A stretch of DNA of 63,318 nt, the filler included, from Octopus bimaculoides (lineage: Eukaryota), in assembly GCF_001194135.2 (NCBI RefSeq). It is 5 parts of 5 records of this genome, joined end to end, with 100 filler letters (N's around TTAATTAATTAA, not from the genome) between each part and the next. Parts side by side here need not be neighbours in the genome. Positions count along the whole stretch, not along the records: positions 1 to 26,823 come from NC_069001.1; 4 more parts are not named here. One strand, 5' to 3'. Below, one piece after another: positions 853-23,486 of the stretch. The position numbers and the translations under genes were made by a program. The notes below the pieces were generated by a model, which saw only the letters and a program-made list of their open reading frames with translations, was not told the DNA's origin and ran no database searches. Positions within the stretch are counted from its first letter, which is position 1, and every line of letters begins with the position of its first letter.

Positions 853-1955
853 AGTAGTAGTAGTCCCCCATTCCACTTCAACCAAGAGCCATATCCTCTC
901 TGAAACTTTCAGCTGTCTTTTTTTTTTTTCCTCATATATTTTTTATACTTAAAACTTTTATTTTTATTTGATGTTTCTGTTACTGGAAGCTGACTAAATC
1001 ACCATCATCATTAGTATTATCATTATCATCATCACCACCACCACCACCATTCTCGTTACTGTAACTATCAGTCATAATCAGTGTCATCATATCATTACCA
1101 TCATCATTGTTATCATCGTCATCATCATCATCATCGTGCACCACCAATGTCTGTGAAAAACCTCAGTTCCTGCTATCTTGCTTAGTAAGGAGCCTCTCTC
1201 TCTCTCTCTCTCTCTCTAGGTTTTCAGGGCCCTTTGAGACACAACCCACTCCACCACCACTGGTACTTTTTATTGGTCACCTAAGTACTTGTGTTGGTTG
1301 TCTTTGTTAAGGACTGTTAATGTTGACCCTTCCTACTTGAGAGGTCATCTTGTAAACCATGACCTCTGCTAATGACTTCTTGTCACTGCCAGAAACCCAA
1401 GGGAACTGACTCTGTATAAAGTGTGTGTGTGGGTATATAGGAGTNNNNNNNNNNNNNNNNNNNNNNNNNNNNNNNNNNNNNNNNNNNNNNNNNNNNNNNN
1501 NNNNNNNNNNNNNNNNNNNNNNNNNNNNNNNNNNNNNNNNNNNNNNNNNNNNNNNNNNNNNNNNNNNNNNNNNNNNNNNNNNNNNNNNNNNNNNNNNNNN
1601 NNNNNNNNNNNNNNNNNNNNNNNNNNNNNNNNNNNNNNNNNNNNNNNNNNNNNNNNNNNNNNNNNNNNNNNNNNNNNNNNNNNNNNNNNNNNNNNNNNNN
1701 NNNNNNNNNNNNNNNNNNNNNNNNNNNNNNNNNNNNNNNNNNNNNNNNNNNNNNNNNNNNNNNNNNNNNNNNNNNNNNNNNNNNNNNNNNNNNNNNNNNN
1801 NNNNNNNNNNNNNNNNNNNNNNNNNNATATATATCTACGTCCCTCAAAATTTACTGTGAATTATCAAACACACAAATATATATTCATTCATGTACACATT
1901 CATACATGCACACACATTTGTATTTATTCATGTGCATATACTCATACACTTGTAT

Positions 1956-7629: not shown

Positions 7630-7946
7630 GTAAGTACAAATGAAGGAATTCTTCAAATATCGGTTTTAAATTTTGATACAGGACCAGCAAGTTTGGGGTA
7701 GGGTGTAAGTCAATTATATCAACCCCAGTACTCAACTGGCACTTATTAATCAACCCTGAAAGGATGAAAGGCAAAGTTGATCTCAGTGGGGTTTGAACTC
7801 AGAACATAACGATGGGCGAAATACTGCTAAACATTTTCCTGGTGTGCATACACATACTCACATATGCCTACATACAAACAACACAAACATACTCACATAT
7901 GCCTACATATATACAACACAAACATGTGTGCATGCACACACACAAC

Positions 7947-12107: not shown

Positions 12108-12215
12108 GTATGTATCATTGCTGTTTCTTCTTTAATCTCCTGTACTTCTGTTTCTCACTCTTCATCACAGTTGGTTGGGTTGATGAGGTGCTGAGCTATG
12201 ATGGGTTTTGAAACT

Positions 12216-12345
12216 CTTGCCCCTACATGCTCTACTCTTACCTCAACATACTCTATTTTCGCTCCCTACATCTCTACTCTTGCTCTTATGTATTCTAAAC
12301 TTGCCCCTATATACCCTACTCTTGCTCATACTCTTCTCCCTACAT
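12216..12345 (+). repeat. Degenerate 21-bp minisatellite (~6 units) in the last intron
   Basis: cttgcccctacatgctctact-like units. Confidence 0.6.
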
Positions 12346-12770
12346 GCTTAGACATTCCCCAAGGAAATGTCGGTTACTGTACTCCTGATACTCATAGACT
12401 TGGTCCAGTGTCAATTGTTGTACTCCTGTCTTTCAGACATGATATTAGTTCAGTGTCGACAGTGACACTCTTGTTTCTCAAACACAATATTCATTTGCTA
12501 TCAATCATTGTACTCTTACTCCAGAACTATGAGTGATAGAACACCACCTGTCACACAGAAACTCTTTCACTGACTGTTCTATTCTGTCATGTGACCCAGA
12601 GAACAACAACCAATGAGAGAACCTAGAAGTTCAGCTGATCACATGATTATTGTGGTCACATGACAACTGGTCATTTGTCCTATCGTTGCACCCCCCCCCC
12701 CATTAAACTGTTTTGATTCACAATAATGACAAATCTTTTTCTATGAACAATTCTCTTTTTGTCTTTTCAG

Positions 12771-14030
12771 GATGAAACTCCATTGTTCCTCGCTGCCCGA
12801 GAAGGAGGCTATGAAACTGCCAAAGTACTCTTGGAATACCATGCCAACCGAGATATTACAGATCACATGGATAGACTACCAAAGGACATGGCTGCTGAGA
12901 AGTTGCACCATGACATAGTTACTTTGCTCGAAGAGTACATGTTGAATACTTCGCCAACGATGCAAGTATCAAACAACATTGCCCCTTCCCCACCATCAAT
13001 GAACTTTGTGCAATCATCGAAACAGAAACAGCGTCCACGTAAATCAACCAAGAACAATCCTCAGTGCAAAGATGTCCAGTCCACAAAGCCAAACAGTGTA
13101 CCAGCACAAAAACCTCGCTCCCGCAAGAAGAAAACGCCTGAAGCAACAACCGTGAATGGTGGCACAAATGCTGAGATGTTGGTTACGACTAAATCACCAC
13201 CGAATATGCACTCTTCCCCTGGTGGGCCTGTTGATGTGATGTCTCAGTTTGACCAGGGTGCTTGTCAAGGTCAATTGGTGATGACCTCCAATATGGACAC
13301 AGAGCGGGACCCTGTTTATCTAGAAAGAGCAGTTATGCGTGCACATTATGCCAAACCTAACCACAGTTACGACATGTCGCCCAACTGGTTCAAATCTGCC
13401 CAGGTGACTAAGCAGGGACCACCACCATTGCCGCCACCACAGCAGCAGCAGCAGCAGCAACAGCAGCAACAACCTCCACCACCACCACAGAAAGTGCCTC
13501 CACAACAAATGCCCCCTCACCTGGTGCAGGTAGTCCCTCAGCAAACAGGTCCTGCACCAATTCCATGCAATGTGCCATCACCTGTAAAACCGAAAAGCCT
13601 GCCAACATCACCAACACACCTGCAGGCGATGCAGCAACATGCACAAATGAACAGGGCAGCACAGCACGAGAGTTGCACATTTGGTGGCGGAGGGAATGGT
13701 GGAGACAGCATTGGTTTGCTCTATCACTCGGATACACCCCATTGTCAAAAAGTGACCGCCCCACATCCAATCGCCCCTGAACAGTACCCCACCCCTCCTT
13801 CACAGCACAGTCACGTCAGCATGGAAGCCCCCATGCAGCACACACAGCCAGTCCCACCAGACCACTACCTAACGCCGTCGCCTGAATCTCCTGGTCAGTG
13901 GTCAAGTTCATCTCCTCACTCACCCCTATCATCTAACTCTGACTGGTCAGACGCCAGTCCAATTCAGACCATCAGTCATCATACACATAACCGAAACACG
14001 AAACGCTTAACTGATGCTATTTACATATAA
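12771..14030 (+). CDS. Notch: Notch terminal coding exon: ANK6-7, NLS, TAD with polyQ, PEST, stop
   Basis: tttcAG acceptor; [12 protein letters not shown]...ITDHMDRLP..., [29 protein letters not shown]...SDWS; TAA at 14028-14030. Confidence 0.98.
13440..13472 (+). repeat. Coding CAG/CAA repeat, Q11 (OPA-like), flanked by polyP
   Basis: PPPLPPP-Q11-PPPPP. Confidence 0.9.
13866..13953 (+). other. PEST / Fbw7-type phosphodegron
   Basis: [29 protein letters not shown]. Confidence 0.9.
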
Positions 14031-17000
14031 ACAATATTAGTGGGGAGCAGTTGCTACAATTTTATTACTACTACTGCTATTACTATTACTTCTACTATAA
14101 CAGTGTGAGCAGGTGTAGTAATATACTAAACTGTTGTTGTTATTACTACTACTACTACTACTATGACAACAAAACTACTACTAAAACAGATGTTGACTTC
14201 ACGCCTTTATGTAGAAGAAACATTACCATAACTGTATGATCATCATCATCAGTAACAACAACAAAAAGATACTTTATTATGAAATCATGTTTGTGTGGGG
14301 TGGGTTACCAGCTTCCTCTCCATACTCGAATATACATACAGCCTACCATTCATTTTCATTGTTTTTTTAGAAAACATTCACTCTTGGTGGAAACACTAAT
14401 TGTGTGTATGTGCATGTGTATATATGTGTGTATGTGTATATATATATATGTATATTTATGTATATATTTATGTATATATGTGTGTGTCTGTGTATATGTA
14501 TGTGTATAATCACAAATATATACATATACACAAAGCTTGCATCCCTTGAGTCACTTAAAATTATATACACTCATCTATTGAGTTCTACTTCTTGTGTTTT
14601 ACTACACACACATTACTAGTGTAATATATATATTTGTCATATGTAAAGTGAACAGGATTATAATATCCAGACTCAAAAAGTTTTGTACAGTCAACTGTGC
14701 AAAAGCTTTGTAGGCTTGACTGTATTCATCAGTAGATTGTGAGGAGAGAAAAGAAATTACACACACACACACATGCATGCATTTATGTATGTATATACAT
14801 ACATATACAAACAAAATACATTCACACACACACACACACACACACGTTTTTAATCCTTGACTTTGAGTTCAACGGAATATATAGTTTAGCTTGAGTACTT
14901 TGAAAAGGATGCTCAAGGGCTTTGGTGAACTCATAATTAAGGATTTAAAATTTTGCTTTGAGTACTTTATTCTAAGTGGCCTGACAGCGTTCCTTTGAAT
15001 CGGTCATCTTGATGAATATAAGTCTTGTGTGTGTTTTGTTTAAATATTGGTTGAAATGGGTCCCAAAGACAATAGAGCAGTAGCTGTCTCAAGGCTTCTC
15101 TGTACCTTCATGGATCATTCATATGAGTGTACAATGACCTTTCTTAATGTACAGAATCTTCAAGCATTTGTGCAAAGGTGTTTTTATATGTTAATATATA
15201 TAGTGTGTATGTACACAAATTAAGGTTTTCCAAAGAATTTTTCACATGGTGTTTACACTTGGCTGCTCTTCCTATCACCCACCATTTTACAGCATGGACT
15301 GGAACCATTTTAATGTAGCAGCTGGTGCTATAGTGTTTGTCTCTGACTGGGCTAAAGAGCCCCCTACCTCCACTAACAAGCTAAATTACAGAGTAGCAAA
15401 GAAGGACTAAGTGAGGAAAAATTCTTAGGGGCACACTCTGCAAGAAAACTAAAAGTTAAGGCCAGTGCTAACATGCTTAATGTTGTGTGCCAAGAAATTT
15501 AAAATCACATCTTTAATGAGGGGAAAGGATCATTAGCTTAATGAACAGTTCTAATCAAGAAAGACATGGGAAATAACCATAGAATTTTAATTAATTAAAA
15601 ATAGAATTCAGGTAACAACATCATCTACTATTCATCTCTGTCTCAGCGCTGACTCTAGATAAACCCCACCACCATCACAGAAGGAGAAAGAAGAGATTGA
15701 AACCTTGCTTCTTAAGACTGAAGAATTTTGTTATTATTCTAAGACCTACAATCAAACTGTGTGATTTAATTTTTTCCAGTTACAATGTATTTAGGACCAC
15801 ATATCTACTGCATCGTTCCATTTATAATGTGTATAGTTTACCTGGTTGTTGTCGTGTAGCTTCTGGTCAGTCCTGGTCCAACAGATTTATGATCAAAGAT
15901 ATTCCAGCCATGACCATCCCAACTTATATTTAGACAAAGTGTATCGAGAGCCACATTATCTGAATAAATTTTAATTTTTCTGTTTTAAAGACTTCAGTAT
16001 AGTGTTTTGATTAAAAAAAAAATATTAGGCTGCTATTTCTAGCAGGTTATGGACCATGAAAGAGAGTGGGATGGTCAGTCTTGCATTGGCTTTGTTTTGG
16101 GGAGTGGAAGAGAAAAAGCAGAGGGTTTGCTAGGTTTACTTTTATATTTATTTTTAATTTTCAAAAAATGGTTATTTATTAAATATTCAATGGTGGTGGG
16201 CAGGGAATTGTTTGACAGGAATATGACGAGTTTCTTTGGAATATTATTCAACAGTGTCTTTGAATATTTATTATTTTCCTTTATTTTAATTATTCTTTTT
16301 TAAACACTTGATCTAGTTAATTAATGAACAATGTTCATTAGTTAATTAATTGGACCCATTGAATTATTAAACAAAAAAATATTTTTTAATTAAGAAAAAA
16401 ATAACAGTGAACCTAAATTTTTTTTTAATAAATTAAAAGCCTAATTTTTATTATTCACACAAATTGTTAGTCGCTCAAATCTTAATTAGAAGTGGTGGTG
16501 GCAGTGAGTATACTGGTAGTGGTGACAGTGTAGGCTTTCTAAAGTTCAACTTCTTTTTAAAAATACCAAATTCACTTTTTTGATTTTAGCTTAGAATTTC
16601 AACTAAATTTCATGAAAATCTTATCAAATTTTTATCACATTTTTTCACCCCACTACACCCAGAAACTAGCCTTATTTGTGCTTACAAAGCAGAACATTCA
16701 GAGTTGCCTTTTATAGAAATAATTAGTAGAACAAGTCAGTGACTTGCCTTATGTGGAGACGATCAGGAGCATATTCAGTGACTTGCCTTATATGGGAGTA
16801 ACTGTAGCATAAACTTGCCTTATATGGAAATAACTGGAACACTGACTTGCCTTATATGGCATTAATTGATAGAACACTGAAAGACTTGCCTTATATGGAT
16901 CTGGTGGAACATGCAGTGCCTTGCATTATATGACAGAGACCCATTCAGTGCCTTGACATAGACAGAAGTTAGAACATTCAATGCTTTATCTTATATGGCA

Positions 17001-17760
17001 ACAGTTAGTAGCGCATTCAGTGCCTTGTCTTATATGGCCATGATAGAAGGAGTATTTGGGGAGCTGTACTACACAGCTGTAAGTGTAACAGAACATTACC
17101 GATGTATTTCTAAGACTCAACCTTAAAAGGCAGTCATTGATGTTCAGGGACTGATGCTAAACGCCTTAATACAGAACCATTTCAATTGTCTTTATGCATC
17201 AGATTCCATCATTTGGACTTTTCGGTTTTAGAACCACAGATTTTAAAATCAAAGGTCAAACATCAGATCATTTAAACTGACACACACACACACACACACA
17301 CACAAAATCAAAACACAAAAGACATATCTCAAAACAATTTAAAACAAACTCTAATACACCACCTCCAAAGATATCTTAGAGTACCCTCTTAAAACTAATT
17401 TAGGTCAGACTCTCATTGCGAAGACACCTATGATCAAAAGCAGTCCAGCTGTGACTATTACCACCCCTCTTTTATTTGTATTCTTTGGTAGACTTGGCAT
17501 ACATCTAGAACCACATTATCTAATATGTCCTGTTATGTTCTTAAGATTGTGGTGTGTGTGATTTGAGGGAAGTTTGACTGTTATTTCTACAACTGCGTAG
17601 ATCCTTCATTGTTGTTTCTTTGTCTGATGTTCTTAACCATTTTGTTAGCATATCTTCCCTTTCAATTAATTTTGTAAATAATGAAGAGTTTAGTAAAACA
17701 AAAAAATAAATAAATAAAATAACACAGTCATTAATTAAACTGGTGTTTGGAAAATAAATT
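14031..17760 (+). other. Probable long Notch 3' UTR (3' end uncertain)
   Basis: Follows the stop codon and is poor in transposons up to the SINE at 18021. AATAAA at 15963, 16427 and clustered at ~17705-17760. Confidence 0.4.
16695..17037 (+). promoter_or_regulatory. Degenerate ~30-40 bp tandem array, consensus CATTCAGTGACTTGCCTTATATGG + variable spacer; miR-124 seed / CArG cluster
   Basis: About 10 units read directly. TGCCTTA at 16745, 16784, 16816, 16848, 16887; GTGCCTT at 16916, 16948, 17020; CCTTATATGG at 16786, 16818, 16850, 16889. Confidence 0.75.
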
Positions 17761-18212: not shown

Positions 18213-19239
18213 TCATTATTTTTTGTTGGTCATTAAAAAAAAGAACACACAAGTCTTCTTATTCATTAATCATTAAGGAAAAAAAAAACAAACAAAAATC
18301 AACTCAATGAAACAATAGTAAATCAGAGGGTGAAGAGGAGAAGCTGGATCTTTCATGCCTTGCTGAACAATATTTTTGAGCACAGCGGACAACATTTTCT
18401 GGACATGTTACAAATATGGTGAAACCTTATGAACAAGAAATTAGTTTGTAATGGCAGCAGTTTTGTTGTTGTTTGTTACATACACACACATATGTATATA
18501 TGCATGTGCATATATGTTTTGGGATAACGCACAAGGAAAAAAAATTTCCAAAGGAACTCTTAACCCTTCAGAAAAAACAATACCCTTCCCCCTTTATTTT
18601 GATGGTCAGCATCATTTTTGCCAATGAAATCCCAATTTGATGGGTGATGTCTGAAATAAAAGAATGATTTTTTTTTTTTTTTGTTATTGGAACAAAAAGA
18701 AAGAACAAAAGACAATAAAAACATTGAAAAACGAAAAAAAGAAAAAAAATATACAATTTTTTTTTTNNNNNNNNNNNNNNNNNNNNNNNNNNNNNNNNNN
18801 NNNNNNNNNNNNNNNNNNNNNNNNNNNNNNNNNNNNNNNNNNNNNNNNNNNNNNNNNNNNNNNNNNNNNNNNNNNNNNNNNNNNNNNNNNNNNNNNNNNN
18901 NNNNNNNNNNNNNNNNNNNNNNNNNNNNNNNNNNNNNNNNNNNNNNNNNNNNNNNNNNNNNNNNNNNNNNNNNNNNNNNNNNNNNNNNNNNNNNNNNNNN
19001 NNNNNNNNNNNNNNNNNNNNNNNNNNNNNNNNNNNNNNNNNNNNNNNNNNNNNNNNNNNNNNNNNNNNNNNNNNNNNNNNNNNNNNNNNNCATTATATTT
19101 CCTCCAAAAAATCAGCCCCAAACCCCCCAGATATTTTGCTATCAGAATATGTAACATAACTTACTATTTCATTTCTGCAGTAAACACAAGAATTCCATCT
19201 CCATTAATCATTATTATTATTATTATAATTTTCTAACTT

Positions 19240-19810: not shown

Positions 19811-21722
19811 TTATTATTGTTGTTATCATCATTATTCCTCATCACCTCTCCATTGTGAACAACAAACCAGAACAATCCAGAATCTTCATATTTTTTTTTT
19901 TCTTCAGAACTCCTTTATCGTTTTTTTTTTTTTTTTCTACTGGACAACTTCCTCACTGAAAGTTGAAGGCAAAAACCATTTATACGAAGGGCATTAATAA
20001 AGTCTAGATATTGGGGATAGTAAGAAACCAGTAATGAAATACTTGGACTAAACTGAGTTGCAGTAGACATTTCGCTTAGAATGGTCTTCTGTATTCTGTT
20101 CTGAGTAGAAATCTTTCCTCGGTCGGTTTAAAAAATATTTTCATCTGAAGTTTCATTCTGGGGTGAAATTTAAGATGGGGAGGGTGAATAGTCTATAAAA
20201 TAAGTCAGTTACTGGGGTTGATATTAACATACCCCCTACACACATCAGCCACTTAGTGGAGGAATGGCAGACATATGTGCCTTGTGGTGTTTCTTATCAT
20301 ACCTTGAAGTCATGAGTTTAAATCATACCAAAGTTGTGCCTTATTAACCCTTCCCAAGTATATAAAATATGTACCAGTAATATACTGAGGTCAGTCAAAT
20401 CATCTAATATCCTTTCCTCTTCTGAAATTTGTGACCATGAAATAGTTATCCTTATCACCATCATCAGTGTCTCAATTGTTGTCGTCATCATCCTCATCAT
20501 GACTTCATCATCATTAACTTCATTATTATCATGATCATCTTCATCGTTAATGGCAGAAACATTGAACTCAACATGCAATCCCTTACATTCTGAGTTCAAA
20601 TACACCTGGGATTCCACTGTGCCCATTCATCTCCTCAATAATAGGGGGTACATACGTGCATCTGTGATTCATTCAATTAGATTCGGTTCCTTATATAATC
20701 ATTACCATAATTGTCCTTTTACATTTTCTGGGTTTGGAGGTTAGGGTTCATAAAAGAAGTCAGTACCAGTCATATGCTAGGGGTTATTGAATGGATCATA
20801 TATTTCTCACAACACGTTGCATCTAAGAAATCTTTGTCATTATCATTTTTGTGGGGCCTGATGGGCAGTGGCAATCCCAACACCACCACCCAGCCCTTTT
20901 CTTCCTGTCTCATTACAATCAGCTCTGCCTCTCCACTCAAATACCTCCATCTGTCTCCTCCTTTGTTTAAATTCTTCTGGGATTCTCATTCTTAACACTT
21001 CCTTCAAACCCAACAAATAAATTTATACATATAATTTTATACACACAGACACATGTATGTATATATATGTTTGTGTATTTATGTATGTGTGTGTGTGTAT
21101 ATATATATATATACATACACACACACACACATACGCATCATATATACTATATACATAAAGAGAAAAGCATGGCTGTGTGGTTATTAAATTTCCTTTAGAA
21201 CCACATGGCACTGCATGCCACCACGGGCCAATGTCTTATATTGCAGCCTCAGATTAAGTGGGACTTGGCATACAAGAGACTGTTCAGAAATCCATCATAT
21301 ATATATATATTTGTTTCACTCATGTGGTTGCAATCATGCTGGAGCACCACCATATTATATATAATGAGTGAAACAACTAAAAAAAAAAAGATATATGTAT
21401 ATATAAAATATATACAAGTGTCTAGTGGGAGTCTGATATCTCACTGTTGAAATATCTTCATGTCTTGGTCTCATGAGGGAAGGCTGAGTCTTGTTTTTGT
21501 TTTGCAATCAAAAAATGACTATTGGTAGAGGGCATATCAGCAGCAGGTAGTTTCTAAGATTAAGGTGCAAAGACTTGGTTTATGGTGATGGACAAAAATT
21601 CTGACAACACAATATATATATATATATATACACACACATGTATGCATGTGTATATATATATATATTTTTTTTAAAAATTTATTTATGGGTTTCAGCCAAG
21701 TGGTTGTGGTCATGCTGGAGCA

Positions 21723-21771
<49 letters not shown>

Positions 21772-22908: not shown

Positions 22909-23486
22909 NNNNNNNNNNNNNNNNNNNNNNNNNNNNNNNNNNNNNNNNNNNNNNNNNNNNNNNNNNNNNNNNNNNNNNNNNNNNNNNNNNNNNNNNNNNN
23001 NNNNNNNNNNNNNNNNNNNNNNNNNNNNNNNNNNNNNNNNNNNNNNNNNNNNNNNNNNNNNNNNNNNNNNNNNNNNNNNNNNNNNNNNNNNNNNNNNNNN
23101 NNNNNNNNNNNNNNNNNNNNNNNNNNNNNNNNNNNNNNNNNNNNNNNNNNNNNNNNNNNNNNNNNNNNNNNNNNNNNNNNNNNNNNNNNNNNNNNNNNNN
23201 NNNNNNNNNNNNNNNNNNNNNNNNNNNNNNNNNNNNNNNNNNNNNNNNNNNNNNNNNNNNNNNNNNNNNNNNNNNNNNNNNNNNNNNNNNNNNNNNNNNN
23301 NNNNNNNNNNNNNNNNNNNNNNNNNNNNNNNNNNNNNNNNNNNNNNNNNNNNNNNNNNNNNNNNNNNNNNNNNNNNNNNNNNNNNNNNNNNNNNNNNNNN
23401 NNNNNNNNNNNNNNNNNNNNNNNNNNNNNNNNNNNNNNNNNNNNNNNNNNNNNNNNNNNNNNNNNNNNNNNNNNNNNNNNNNNNNN

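What the first reader, a model, noticed from the sequence alone, without database searches (positions are those of the whole stretch)
16695..17037. Array of 9 miR-124 seed sites with 3'-supplementary pairing downstream of the Notch stop codon
Seen in sequence: ~10 diverged units of 30-40 bp. They give five 7mer-A1 sites (TGCCTTA at 16745, 16784, 16816, 16848, 16887), three 7mer-m8 sites (GTGCCTT at 16916, 16948, 17020), one 6mer (16705) and one wobble variant (~16982). Several are preceded by (C)ATTCA, the complement of miR-124 nt 13-18 (UAAGGCACGCGGUGAAUGCC). Spacing is near ideal at 16695 and 16773 and strained at 16942 and 17014. In the units where the downstream TGCCTTA has decayed (TGCATTA, TGACATA, TGTCTTA), the upstream GTGACTT reads GTGCCTT, so nearly every unit keeps exactly one site; this resembles compensatory turnover. 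Established: miR-124 is a pan-bilaterian neuronal miRNA with reported links to the Notch pathway. Inference: a tandem-repeat-built miR-124 switch (or sponge) in a long Notch 3' UTR that shuts Notch off in differentiating neurons, possibly toggled by alternative polyadenylation at upstream AATAAA signals (15963, 16427).
Basis: partly seen in the sequence, partly recalled or inferred. Interest (0 to 1): 0.9.

Follow-up and report, generated by a model that had tools for sequence, protein, structure and literature searches.

The report
Repeat array with miR-124 sites near Notch
A short, decayed tandem repeat 2.7 kb past the end of a Notch gene really does carry eight to nine matches to the neuronal microRNA miR-124, but they stem from one or two ancestral sequence events copied by duplication, and nothing available here shows that the repeat is part of the Notch messenger RNA or was selected for microRNA binding.

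Summary
Five TGCCTTA, three GTGCCTT, one TGCCTT and one G:U-wobble variant lie on the + strand at 16705-17026, inside a 10-11-unit minisatellite (units 30-41 bp). The array is 2.67 kb downstream of the authentic stop codon (14028-14030) of a Notch gene (LNR, NOD, NODP, EGF and Ank domains; conserved A(I/V)YI C-terminus).

- The sites are not independent. They trace to one ancestral core (ACTTGCCTTATATGG) plus a single A>C change shared by the contiguous units 7-10.
- A ~14-nt core is protected relative to the spacers (10% vs 28% mismatches), but the seed is kept no better than the adjacent TATATGG, which cannot pair with miR-124.
- That core is also a perfect CArG/SRF box (CCTTATATGG, four copies).
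- 3'-supplementary pairing is no better than in seed-preserving shuffles.
- Five relatives show no excess of miR-124 sites downstream of Notch, and none has the array.
- Whether a Notch transcript reaches 17 kb could not be tested. Two AATAAA signals precede the array.

Most likely mechanism (about 0.35): a cooperative miR-124 response cluster in an extended Notch 3' UTR. A neutral minisatellite is almost as likely (about 0.33), and a DNA-level CArG cluster is third (about 0.15).

The parts
12759..14030 (+). Last coding exon of Notch, given as ORF limits (the true splice acceptor lies just inside). It holds the final ankyrin repeat, a poly-Q/P-rich tail, the conserved ...[18 protein letters not shown]...DAIYI C-terminus, and the TAA stop at 14028-14030.
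   Evidence: ORF. Pfam Ank match. The alignment with six relatives, which all end in A(I/V)YI or VYL followed by a stop, is. Upstream exons carry the EGF, LNR, NOD and NODP domains.
15963..15968 (+). AATAAA with T/GT-rich sequence downstream. It is a candidate proximal poly(A) signal that would give a ~1.9-kb 3' UTR ending before the array.
   Evidence: This is sequence only and its use is unknown. AATAAA occurs at about the chance rate in this AT-rich DNA.
16427..16432 (+). Second AATAAA upstream of the array.
16665..17049 (+). Degenerate minisatellite. There is a decayed core at 16665-16679, then 10 units of 30-41 bp starting at 16690, 16727, 16767, 16805, 16837, 16870, 16907, 16940, 16970 and 17009. 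The consensus unit is TAGAACATTCAGTGACTTGCCTTATATGGAAATAATTG.
   Evidence: In gap-free cells the core CTTGCCTTATATGG has 10% mismatches and the rest of the unit 28% (column-level p = 0.0005).
16705..16710 (+). miR-124 6mer match (TGCCTT) in unit 1. CATTCA lies 4 nt upstream at 16695 (offset -1).
   Evidence: Duplex energy is not significant against shuffles (0.14).
16745..16893 (+). Five 7mer-A1 matches (TGCCTTA) at 16745, 16784, 16816, 16848 and 16887, in units 2-6. Each is embedded in ACTTGCCTTAT(A/G)TGG.
16786..16898 (.). Four identical perfect CArG boxes (CCTTATATGG = CC(A/T)6GG) at 16786, 16818, 16850 and 16889, each overlapping a seed match by CCTTA. One-mismatch versions occur in units 2, 9 and 10.
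   Evidence: only 3 other CC(A/T)6GG occur in the whole piece. CCATATAAGG is a functional CArG element (PMC6497884).
16916..17026 (+). Three 7mer-m8 matches (GTGCCTT) at 16916, 16948 and 17020, in units 7, 8 and 10, and the wobble variant TGCTTT at 16982 in unit 9. All four units share the same A>C change in GTGACTT, and the downstream heptamer has decayed in each of them.
   Evidence: The alternative register of unit 10 (G:U seed TGTCTTA plus miRNA nt 9-11 and 13-19) reaches -22 kcal/mol, with 0.015 of shuffles as good, uncorrected.
17124..17145 (-). Single inverted unit-like copy. Its reverse complement GAACATCAATGACTGCCTTTTA compares with unit 1 GAACATTCAGAGTTGCCTTTTA.
   Evidence: pair I11 (73% complementary). 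It may be chance. It closes a long-range stem in the MFE fold, which is not significant.
17705..17758 (+). Cluster of AATAAA hexamers at 17705, 17709, 17713 and 17753, with TGGTGTTTGG downstream. This is the first canonical poly(A)-signal candidate after the array, and would give a ~3.7-kb 3' UTR containing it.
   Evidence: Sequence only.

Best explanation
Shown: this is a lineage-specific, partly decayed minisatellite in non-coding DNA, 2.67-3.02 kb downstream of the Notch stop codon and on the Notch sense strand. Its ancestral ~38-bp unit carried one 14-15-nt core (A)CTTGCCTTATATGG. That core contains a miR-124 7mer-A1 match, and tandem duplication multiplied it. In the ancestor of the last four units, one A>C change created a second match (GTGCCTT) 6 nt upstream, after which the original match decayed there.

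Inferred, and the mechanism I commit to: a long Notch 3' UTR isoform reads through the AATAAA signals at 15963 and 16427 and ends near the AATAAA cluster at 17705-17753. It therefore carries eight canonical miR-124 sites and one 6mer, 30-40 nt apart, in AU-rich unstructured RNA about 0.7 kb from the transcript end. In cells that express miR-124 (differentiating and mature neurons in the animals studied), neighbouring Argonaute-miR-124 complexes would bind cooperatively and repress that isoform strongly. Transcripts ending at the proximal signals would escape.

The multiplicity of sites is a product of repeat expansion. Whether selection then kept it is open.
For: - Sites and strand: 8 sites of 7mer grade or better on the + strand against 0.34 expected, and none on the minus strand.
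- Chance for miR-124 specifically: one 38-nt unit carries such a site with probability about 0.003, and the gene upstream is Notch. Reporter assays support direct miR-124 repression of Notch in sea urchin and planarian, and a miR-124/Notch feedback is reported in Ciona.
- miR-124 in a mollusc: it is enriched in the CNS of Lymnaea (PMC6163488).
- Constraint: a core that includes the seed is protected relative to the spacers, 14/139 against 60/213 gap-free mismatches, column-level p = 0.0005.
- Shifted conservation: in units 7-10 the best-kept stretch moves upstream to ATTCAGTGCCTT, which holds the new seed match, and the old seed columns loosen.
- Coverage: 9 of 10 units keep at least a 6mer.
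- Spacing: 30-40 nt for seven of eight intervals. Four fall inside the experimentally optimal 13-35 nt range and three just outside (PMC1874663).
- Accessibility: no stable structure competes, z = +0.62.
- No rival owner: no other gene, Pfam domain, conserved exon, tRNA or Rfam family claims the 12.8 kb downstream.
- Long 3' UTRs are documented for octopus (PMC9699675), if the cephalopod guess is right.
Against: - No transcript evidence of any kind could be obtained. The source species is absent from the protein and contig collections.
- Two AATAAA signals, the first in a good T/GT-rich context, lie between the stop codon and the array.
- Within the core, the seed columns are kept no better than the neighbouring TATATGG, which cannot contact miR-124. 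Mismatches are 7/70 against 13/80 (p = 0.34), and TTATATG is intact in 7 units against 5 for TGCCTTA.
- 3'-supplementary pairing is not above shuffles.
- The 'turnover' rests on one shared mutation.
- Five relatives have 0, 2, 0, 1 and 0 sites in the 4 kb downstream of Notch, against about 0.3-0.5 expected each, and none has the array or its core.
- Sites for 40 other ancient miRNA families are no commoner on the + strand (20) than on the minus strand (27) of 14031-17760.
- The chance that a repeat unit holds a site for some well-known miRNA is about 16%, and many of those miRNAs could have been linked to Notch after the fact.
Confidence: 0.35

Rival explanations
1. Neutral minisatellite. Replication slippage or unequal exchange amplified a ~38-bp unit in intergenic or untranscribed 3'-flanking DNA. 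The unit happened to contain TGCCTTA, so the seed count is a copying artefact with no effect on Notch.
For: - All sites derive from about two mutational events.
- TRF sees only 2.5 well-preserved copies and the array edges are decayed.
- The window is full of micro- and minisatellites (88 TRF rows).
- About 16% of random units would carry a site for one of 41 ancient miRNA families.
- There is no counterpart in the nearest relative, and no enrichment of miR-124 sites downstream of Notch in five relatives.
- The seed is not preferentially kept, supplementary pairing is at chance level, and an inverted stray unit lies at 17124-17145.
- Two poly(A) signals lie upstream of the array.
Against: - A contiguous 14-nt core is kept much better than the rest of the unit (10% vs 28% mismatches, p = 0.0005). 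It is 100% identical in four units whose spacers have diverged by substitutions and indels. Uniform neutral decay does not predict this.
- The specific coincidence of miR-124 with Notch has a per-unit probability of about 0.003.
Confidence: 0.33
2. DNA-level element: a homotypic cluster of CArG boxes. Four identical CCTTATATGG sites plus three one-mismatch copies, 32-39 bp apart, would bind an SRF/MADS-box factor and act as an enhancer downstream of Notch. The overlap with the miR-124 seed (CCTTA) would be incidental.
For: - Four perfect CC(A/T)6GG lie within 113 bp, against three in the remaining 26 kb.
- CArG accounts for 10 of the 14 protected core positions, including TATATGG, which the miRNA model cannot explain. 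The best-kept heptamers TTATATG and TATATGG lie inside it.
- The exact decamer CCATATAAGG is a working CArG element, and nine tandem copies make an inducible synthetic promoter (PMC6497884).
Against: - The CArG box has decayed in all four 3' units (GCATTATATGA, GACATAGACA, TCTTATATGG twice), whereas a miR-124 seed persists in three of them.
- It leaves the invariant CTTG just upstream unexplained.
- The four boxes are copies of one, so the clustering is not independent evidence.
- There are no CArG boxes in the 4 kb downstream of Notch in five relatives.
- There are no data on SRF binding specificity or occupancy in this taxon.
Confidence: 0.15
3. Another sequence-specific element uses the 14-nt core. 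Examples are a site for an RNA-binding protein in the 3' UTR, or for a transcription factor other than SRF. The miR-124 seed and the CArG match would both be incidental sub-strings.
For: Protection covers the whole of CTTGCCTTATATGG fairly evenly. That is more than either the 7-nt seed or the 10-nt CArG box explains alone.
Against: No candidate factor could be named or tested. No Rfam family matches. The explanation is residual.
Confidence: 0.08
4. Part of a dispersed repeat: the internal tandem-repeat region of a transposon, or a member of a genome-wide minisatellite family that inserted downstream of Notch.
For: A stray inverted unit lies 90 bp beyond the array. The surrounding DNA holds other dispersed repeats, for example 21301-21363 and 21677-21739.
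Against: The core occurs nowhere else in the 26.8-kb piece or in the five related loci. No terminal inverted repeats or target-site duplications flank the array. There is no match in the metagenome scan, which is weak evidence because the source genome is not in any searchable collection.
Confidence: 0.06
5. miR-124 sponge or decoy: the array titrates miR-124 away from its other targets instead of regulating Notch.
For: Closely spaced sites bind cooperatively and compete more potently than isolated ones (PMC5101187). The architecture of repeated seeds with diverged spacers is reminiscent of CDR1as (from memory).
Against: Only 8-9 sites on what would be one minor isoform of one mRNA. Derepression by competing RNAs needs a high threshold of added sites and arises only in unusual circumstances (PMC5101187). 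miR-124 is among the most abundant neuronal miRNAs (established knowledge). There is no extensive 3' pairing of the kind that triggers miRNA decay.
Confidence: 0.03

Closest known systems
Direct miR-124 repression of Notch through 3' UTR seed sites (sea urchin Notch; planarian notch-2; Ciona miR-124/Notch feedback)
   Same: The same miRNA seed, the same target gene family, the same sense-strand position downstream of the stop codon, and the same proposed logic of removing Notch as cells commit to a neuronal fate (bioRxiv 10.1101/2021.12.10.471989; PMC5612250).
   Different: Those cases have one or two isolated sites that were validated with reporters. Here there are 8-9 sites generated by a tandem repeat, unvalidated, 2.7 kb past the stop codon and beyond two poly(A) signals, with no counterpart in five relatives. 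The planarian paper itself notes that Notch is not a predicted miR-124 target in flies or nematodes, so the link is patchy and not universal.
CDR1as/ciRS-7, a tandem-repeat-built array of miR-7 seed sites (from memory, not tested here)
   Same: Many seed matches to one neuronal miRNA, arranged as short diverged tandem units with little pairing beyond the seed.
   Different: CDR1as is a circular non-coding RNA with more than 60 sites, conserved across mammals with seed-specific conservation. Here there are 8-9 sites, at best in a linear 3' UTR, the seed is kept no better than its neighbours, and conservation is unknown.
Multi-site 3' UTR switches such as lin-14/lin-4, lin-41/let-7 and Hmga2/let-7 (from memory)
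   Same: Several sites for one miRNA in one 3' UTR give switch-like repression. Nearby sites act cooperatively (PMC1874663).
   Different: Those sites are scattered, individually conserved and not products of a recent tandem duplication.
Homotypic CArG/SRE clusters (Egr-1-type CArG elements; synthetic E9NS promoter with nine CCATATAAGG copies)
   Same: The identical decamer CCTTATATGG/CCATATAAGG, repeated in tandem (PMC6497884).
   Different: Known clusters lie in promoters. This one is about 2.7 kb downstream of a stop codon, only 4 of 10 units keep a perfect box, and nothing is known about SRF here.
Ordinary minisatellite (VNTR) in 3'-flanking DNA
   Same: Head-to-tail units of 30-41 bp, indel-rich, decayed at the edges, and lineage-specific.
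   Different: The internal 14-nt core is markedly better preserved than the rest of the unit.

Membership tests
Notch receptor gene (context claim) | EGF repeats, LNR repeats, NOD/NODP, a transmembrane segment and ankyrin repeats in that order on one strand | tested here: met
   Pfam: EGF 7.3e-20, LNR 2.8e-26, NOD 4.5e-19, NODP 1.1e-8, Ank 1.3e-7, all on + strand ORF fragments in the expected order.
Notch receptor gene (context claim) | The stop codon at 14028-14030 is the true C-terminus | tested here: met
   Six relatives align to the end and all terminate in A(I/V)YI or VYL followed by a stop, after the invariant LTPSP.SPG.WSSSSP motif.
Canonical miRNA response element in a 3' UTR | Perfect match to miRNA nt 2-7 plus nt 8 and/or an A opposite nt 1 | tested here: met
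   Five 7mer-A1, three 7mer-m8 and one 6mer on the + strand.
Canonical miRNA response element in a 3' UTR | Lies within the 3' UTR of an expressed mRNA, upstream of a poly(A) site that is actually used | not testable with these tools
   No transcript data are available, and the source species is absent from the collections. AATAAA signals lie both before (15963, 16427) and after (17705-17753) the array.
Canonical miRNA response element in a 3' UTR | The miRNA exists in the organism and is co-expressed with the target | not testable with these tools
   The taxon is unidentified and no mir-124 locus is in the window (Rfam found no hits). miR-124 is conserved across bilaterians (established knowledge) and enriched in the CNS of a mollusc (PMC6163488).
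Canonical miRNA response element in a 3' UTR | The seed is preferentially conserved relative to flanking positions | tested here: not met
   Among the units, seed columns have 7/70 mismatches and the other core columns 13/80 (p = 0.34). TTATATG is intact in 7 units and TGCCTTA in 5. Across species the region is not alignable with the only close relative, so the proper test remains undone.
Canonical miRNA response element in a 3' UTR | 3'-supplementary pairing (miRNA nt 13-16) at a workable offset | tested here: inconclusive
   (C)ATTCA sits at offset -1 in unit 1 and +1 in unit 3. In units 8 and 10 it abuts the seed with no room for the loop. Duplex energies do not differ from shuffles that keep the seed (0.07-0.63). 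The joint chance of a seed plus ATTCA in one unit is 4e-5, but this was chosen after the fact.
Canonical miRNA response element in a 3' UTR | Targeting conserved in orthologous genes | tested here: not met
   Five relatives have 0, 2, 0, 1 and 0 sites in the 4 kb downstream of Notch, against an expectation of 0.3-0.5 each.
miRNA sponge (CDR1as-like) | A very large number of sites and/or high, stable expression sufficient to titrate the miRNA | not testable with these tools
   There are only 8-9 sites and abundance is unknown. The published thresholds for competition are high (PMC5101187).
CArG/SRF-box cluster | CC(A/T)6GG motif, clustered | tested here: met
   Four perfect identical boxes at 16786, 16818, 16850 and 16889, against three elsewhere in 26.8 kb. 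The copies are not independent.
CArG/SRF-box cluster | Motif maintained across all units and across relatives | tested here: not met
   The box is perfect in only 4 of 10 units and has decayed in all of units 7-10. It is absent from the 4 kb downstream of Notch in five relatives.
CArG/SRF-box cluster | SRF occupancy or enhancer activity | not testable with these tools
   This needs ChIP, ATAC or a reporter assay.
Minisatellite | Head-to-tail repeats with units of 10-100 bp | tested here: met
   Ten units of 30-41 bp.
Dispersed repeat or transposon-borne array | Further copies elsewhere; terminal repeats or target-site duplications | tested here: inconclusive
   No other copy exists in the window or in five related loci, there are no terminal repeats, and the metagenome scan was empty. 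The source genome itself could not be searched.
miRNA or other structured RNA gene on either strand | A stable hairpin or an Rfam match | tested here: not met
   z = +0.62 on the + strand and +1.19 on the - strand. No Rfam family reaches its gathering score anywhere in the piece.

The most novel reading that the evidence does not exclude
A lophotrochozoan lineage independently acquired miR-124 control of Notch. It did so by amplifying a single seed-bearing motif into a cooperative 8-9-site switch carried only by a long, neuron-type 3' UTR isoform. Selection then maintained about one site per unit, including a seed relocation within the array (units 7-10). The same core may also double as a DNA-level CArG element. 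This would be a caught-in-the-act example of a tandem repeat building a miRNA switch on a core developmental receptor.
Probability: 0.15. Interest if true: 0.7.

Novelty: new member of a known kind. Interest (0 to 1): 0.4.

Why it matters
If the array is part of a Notch mRNA isoform and responds to miR-124, it would do three things. It would add a protostome case to the patchy list of animals in which miR-124 directly represses Notch. It would show that a strong, cooperative miRNA switch can arise in one step by minisatellite expansion, without slow accumulation of scattered sites. And it would couple that switch to the choice of poly(A) site.

That would interest people working on 3' UTR evolution and on neurogenesis in animals with large nervous systems. 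If it is neutral, it is a useful caution. Tandem repeats inflate seed counts, and with dozens of well-known miRNAs about one repeat unit in six will carry a 'meaningful' seed by chance.

Tried and rejected
1. Same-species transcripts or contigs. An exact look-up of the last-exon ORF found nothing. Two homology searches found no protein closer than 63-68% identity, and both best hits are on one ENA contig. Transcript coverage and the taxon therefore stay unresolved.

2. Orthologous alignment. Only coding exons align with L001, at 70-81% identity, and nothing downstream of the stop codon aligns even with word size 7. Absence of the array there shows it is lineage-specific. It does not show lack of constraint, because the proximal 3' UTR is equally unalignable.

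3. The 8mers about 5-6 kb downstream in both the window (20336) and L001 (16652) sit in unrelated sequence contexts. I rejected them as a conserved site.

4. Hairpin, miRNA-cluster or antisense miR-124-like gene on the minus strand, which carries TAAGGCA. No structure is present and there is no Rfam hit.

5. A neighbouring gene that owns the region. None of the five ORFs of at least 90 aa between 20318 and 26366 matches Pfam. No conserved exon appeared when 285 six-frame segments were compared with five relatives' flanks. There are no tRNAs.

6. A transposon with terminal repeats around the array. Only one weak inverted unit was found.

7. A dispersed family. The two-core pattern has no match in the metagenome collection, and the core has none in the fetched loci. 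This is uninformative about the source genome.

8. A translated search with array ORFs was abandoned, because all frames are 44 aa or shorter.

9. A UTR-like strand bias of other ancient miRNA sites is absent: 20 on the + strand against 27 on the - strand.

10. The first blastn, run without a low-complexity filter, was swamped by microsatellite hits and had to be repeated with filtering.

Full report
**1. What is in the sequence**

The finding's coordinates are exact.
- On the + strand, TGCCTTA occurs at 16745, 16784, 16816, 16848 and 16887.
- GTGCCTT occurs at 16916, 16948 and 17020.
- TGCCTT occurs at 16705, and the G:U-wobble variant TGCTTT at 16982.
- CATTCA is at 16695, 16942, 16975 and 17014, and ATTCA at 16773.

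These lie in a degenerate tandem repeat. I split it into ten units of 30-41 bp, starting at 16690, 16727, 16767, 16805, 16837, 16870, 16907, 16940, 16970 and 17009. A further decayed core lies at 16665. The consensus unit is TAGAACATTCAGTGACTTGCCTTATATGGAAATAATTG. Tandem Repeats Finder recognises only the best-kept part, 16781-16859 (period 32, 2.5 copies, 85% matches).

**2. Gene context**

The + strand upstream carries a multi-exon Notch gene. Pfam finds EGF, LNR (2.8e-26), NOD, NODP and ankyrin domains in the expected order. The last exon ends ...[12 protein letters not shown]...TDAIYI followed by TAA at 14028-14030. Six relatives align to the very end and all stop after A(I/V)YI or VYL, so this is the true C-terminus. 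The array therefore begins 2.67 kb downstream of the stop codon, on the sense strand.

AATAAA hexamers lie at 15963 (good T/GT-rich downstream context) and 16427, both before the array. The next ones are at 17705-17753, followed by 18655 and 18714. In DNA this AT-rich, the number of such hexamers is about what composition predicts, so they do not show where the transcript ends.

Nothing else claims the 12.8 kb downstream.
- None of the five ORFs of at least 90 aa between 20318 and 26366 has a Pfam domain.
- No conserved exon turned up when 285 six-frame segments were compared with relatives' flanks.
- There is no tRNA and no Rfam family.

The piece contains three assembly gaps.

**3. Is it more than chance?**

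Counted naively, yes. There are 8 sites of 7mer grade or better in the 4 kb after the stop codon against 0.34 expected (0 of 300 resamples reach 8), and none on the minus strand.

But the sites are copies. The alignment of units shows one ancestral core, ACTTGCCTTATATGG, identical in units 3-6. It also shows a single A>C change (GTGACTT to GTGCCTT) shared by the contiguous units 7-10. So about two mutational events underlie all the sites.

- A random 38-nt unit of this composition carries a miR-124 7mer with probability 0.003.
- With ATTCA also at an offset of -2 to +3, the probability is 4e-5.
- It carries a site for at least one of 41 ancient miRNA families (seed list from memory) with probability 0.16.

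The coincidence with miR-124 specifically is uncommon. The coincidence with 'some miRNA one could tie to Notch' is not rare.

**4. Is there constraint, and on what?**

A contiguous 14-nt core, CTTGCCTTATATGG, is far better kept than the rest of the unit.
- All cells: 20/150 against 82/230 mismatches (permutation, 0 of 5000).
- Gap-free cells: 14/139 against 60/213 (column-level Mann-Whitney p = 0.0005).
- Distinct variant states per column: 0.86 against 1.54 (p = 0.014).

Units 3-6 have identical cores while their spacers differ by substitutions and indels (family D3). Uniform neutral decay does not predict this, so some force, whether selection or a repeat-specific mechanism, preserves the core.

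The protection is not seed-specific. Seed columns have 7/70 mismatches and the other core columns 13/80 (p = 0.34). The heptamers intact in the most units are TTATATG (7), then TATATGG, CTTATAT and TTGCCTT (6 each), ahead of TGCCTTA (5). TATATGG lies 3' of the position opposite miRNA nucleotide 1 and cannot pair with miR-124.

**5. A rival reading of the same core**

CCTTATATGG is a perfect CC(A/T)6GG CArG box. Four identical copies lie at 16786, 16818, 16850 and 16889, and only three other CArG matches occur in the whole piece. The decamer is a working SRF-type element: nine tandem CCATATAAGG copies form an inducible synthetic promoter (PMC6497884).

CArG explains 10 of the 14 protected positions, including TATATGG. 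It leaves the nearly invariant CTTG unexplained. It has also decayed in all of units 7-10, where a miR-124 seed persists in three of four units.

The block-wise profile shows the best-kept stretch moving from GACTTGCCTTATATGG in units 2-6 to ATTCAGTGCCTT in units 7-10. It moves together with the seed.

**6.

*3'-supplementary pairing.* (C)ATTCA is indeed the complement of miR-124 nt 13-18. Only units 1 and 3 place it at a workable offset (-1 and +1). In units 8 and 10 it abuts the m8 seed with no room for the miRNA's central loop. RNAduplex energies are not better than when the 20 nt upstream of each seed are shuffled: the fraction of shuffles at least as good is 0.07-0.63. Only an alternative register in unit 10 (G:U-wobble seed TGTCTTA plus nt 9-11 and 13-19, -22 kcal/mol) reaches 0.015, uncorrected for eleven tests.

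*Compensatory turnover.* The pattern is real. No unit has both sites, three have only the upstream one, six only the downstream one, and one neither (one-sided Fisher p = 0.033). But the upstream gain is a single shared event and the units are not independent. The downstream heptamer was lost by at least three different mutations in units 7-10. That fits relaxed constraint after a replacement, but it equally fits the generally greater decay at that end of the array.

**7. Relatives**

The source species is not in the protein or contig collections. The best hits are 63-68% identical and both lie on one ENA contig. In that contig (L001), exons align at 70-81% identity and nothing downstream of the stop codon aligns. 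This shows the array is lineage-specific at that distance. It cannot speak to constraint, since even the proximal 3' UTR is unalignable.

Across five relatives' loci, the 4 kb downstream of Notch hold 0, 2, 0, 1 and 0 miR-124 sites of 7mer grade or better, against 0.3-0.5 expected each. They hold no CArG boxes and no copy of the core. So miR-124 targeting is not a visible conserved property of this orthologue group. That agrees with the planarian paper's remark that Notch is a predicted miR-124 target in planarians and vertebrates but not in flies or nematodes (PMC5612250).

**8. Other checks**

- Neither strand of 16650-17150 is more structured than shuffles (z = +0.62 and +1.19). This excludes hairpin or miRNA-precursor readings and is favourable for site accessibility.
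- The core is not repeated elsewhere in the piece.
- A single inverted unit-like copy lies at 17124-17145.
- Sites for 40 other ancient miRNA families show no + strand excess in 14031-17760 (20 against 27).
- The metagenome scan for a two-core pattern was empty.

**9. Mechanism**

If a Notch isoform reads through to the 17.7-kb signals, it would carry eight canonical sites and one 6mer. The seed starts are 40, 39, 32, 32, 39, 30, 32 and 72 nt apart. Optimal cooperative repression was measured at 13-35 nt (PMC1874663), and closely spaced sites bind cooperatively (PMC5101187). Such an isoform would be strongly repressed wherever miR-124 is abundant, while isoforms ending at the proximal signals would escape. 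This step is inference.

Reporter assays support direct miR-124 repression of Notch 3' UTRs in sea urchin and planarian notch-2 (24% repression), and a miR-124/Notch feedback is reported in Ciona (cited). miR-124 is enriched in the CNS of a mollusc. Octopus has unusually long 3' UTRs, though I could not verify that this window is from a cephalopod. A sponge role is unlikely on stoichiometric grounds.

**10. Verdict**

| Explanation | Probability |
|---|---|
| miR-124 response cluster in an extended Notch 3' UTR | 0.35 |
| Neutral minisatellite | 0.33 |
| CArG/SRF cluster | 0.15 |
| Other factor using the core | 0.08 |
| Dispersed repeat | 0.06 |
| Sponge | 0.03 |

If real, it is a new member of a known kind (a multi-site miRNA response element; the miR-124/Notch link), with an uncommon origin by tandem repetition. 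Interest is 0.4. The decisive data, namely transcript 3' ends, alignment with close relatives, and a seed-versus-CArG mutant reporter, are all straightforward to obtain.

Noticed in passing
window 20277-20343: A second, non-repeat pair of miR-124 matches on the + strand: GTGCCTT at 20277 and the window's only 8mer, GTGCCTTA, at 20336. They are 59 nt apart and about 6.3 kb past the Notch stop codon. L001 also has a lone 8mer about 5.3 kb past its stop codon (16652), but the flanking sequences are unrelated.
   Followed up: partly
window 21301-21363 and 21677-21739: Two 63-nt copies (78% identical) of a dispersed element, each flanked by (TA)n. The motif ...GGT(T/C)..TCATGCTGGAGCACCACC... resembles, from memory, an abundant cephalopod SINE. 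It is a possible clue to the taxon.
   Followed up: no
window 17124-17145 (-): A single inverted copy of an array unit about 75 bp beyond the array's end. In the MFE fold it pairs with unit 1 to close a ~410-nt loop, but the fold is not better than shuffles.
   Followed up: partly
window 13440-13471: A CAG/CAA repeat encoding a run of eleven glutamines followed by prolines in the Notch C-terminal tail, comparable to the opa-type repeat of Drosophila Notch (from memory). P0001 has an even longer Q/P run at the same place.
   Followed up: no
window 12213-12325: A 21-bp-period repeat (5.4 copies, 67% matches, ACTCTTGCCCCTACATACTCT) in the intron preceding the last Notch exon. It contains CTTGCC, the same hexamer as the array core, which is probably coincidence.
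   Followed up: no
window 1445-1826, 18767-19090, 22909-23486: Three runs of N (382, 324 and 578 bp) are assembly gaps, each bordered by microsatellites. The gap at 18767 lies 1 kb beyond the distal AATAAA cluster, so sequence relevant to the 3' end could be missing.
   Followed up: no
L005 548-2320 (-): A 590-aa ORF with a DDE_Tnp_1_7 (piggyBac-type transposase) domain sits within the relative's Notch locus, about 5.7 kb upstream of its last coding exon.
   Followed up: no
window 7852-7925: A 35-bp unit repeated 2.1 times at 94% identity, in the intron after the transmembrane exon. This is another young minisatellite and shows how common such repeats are in this locus.
   Followed up: no
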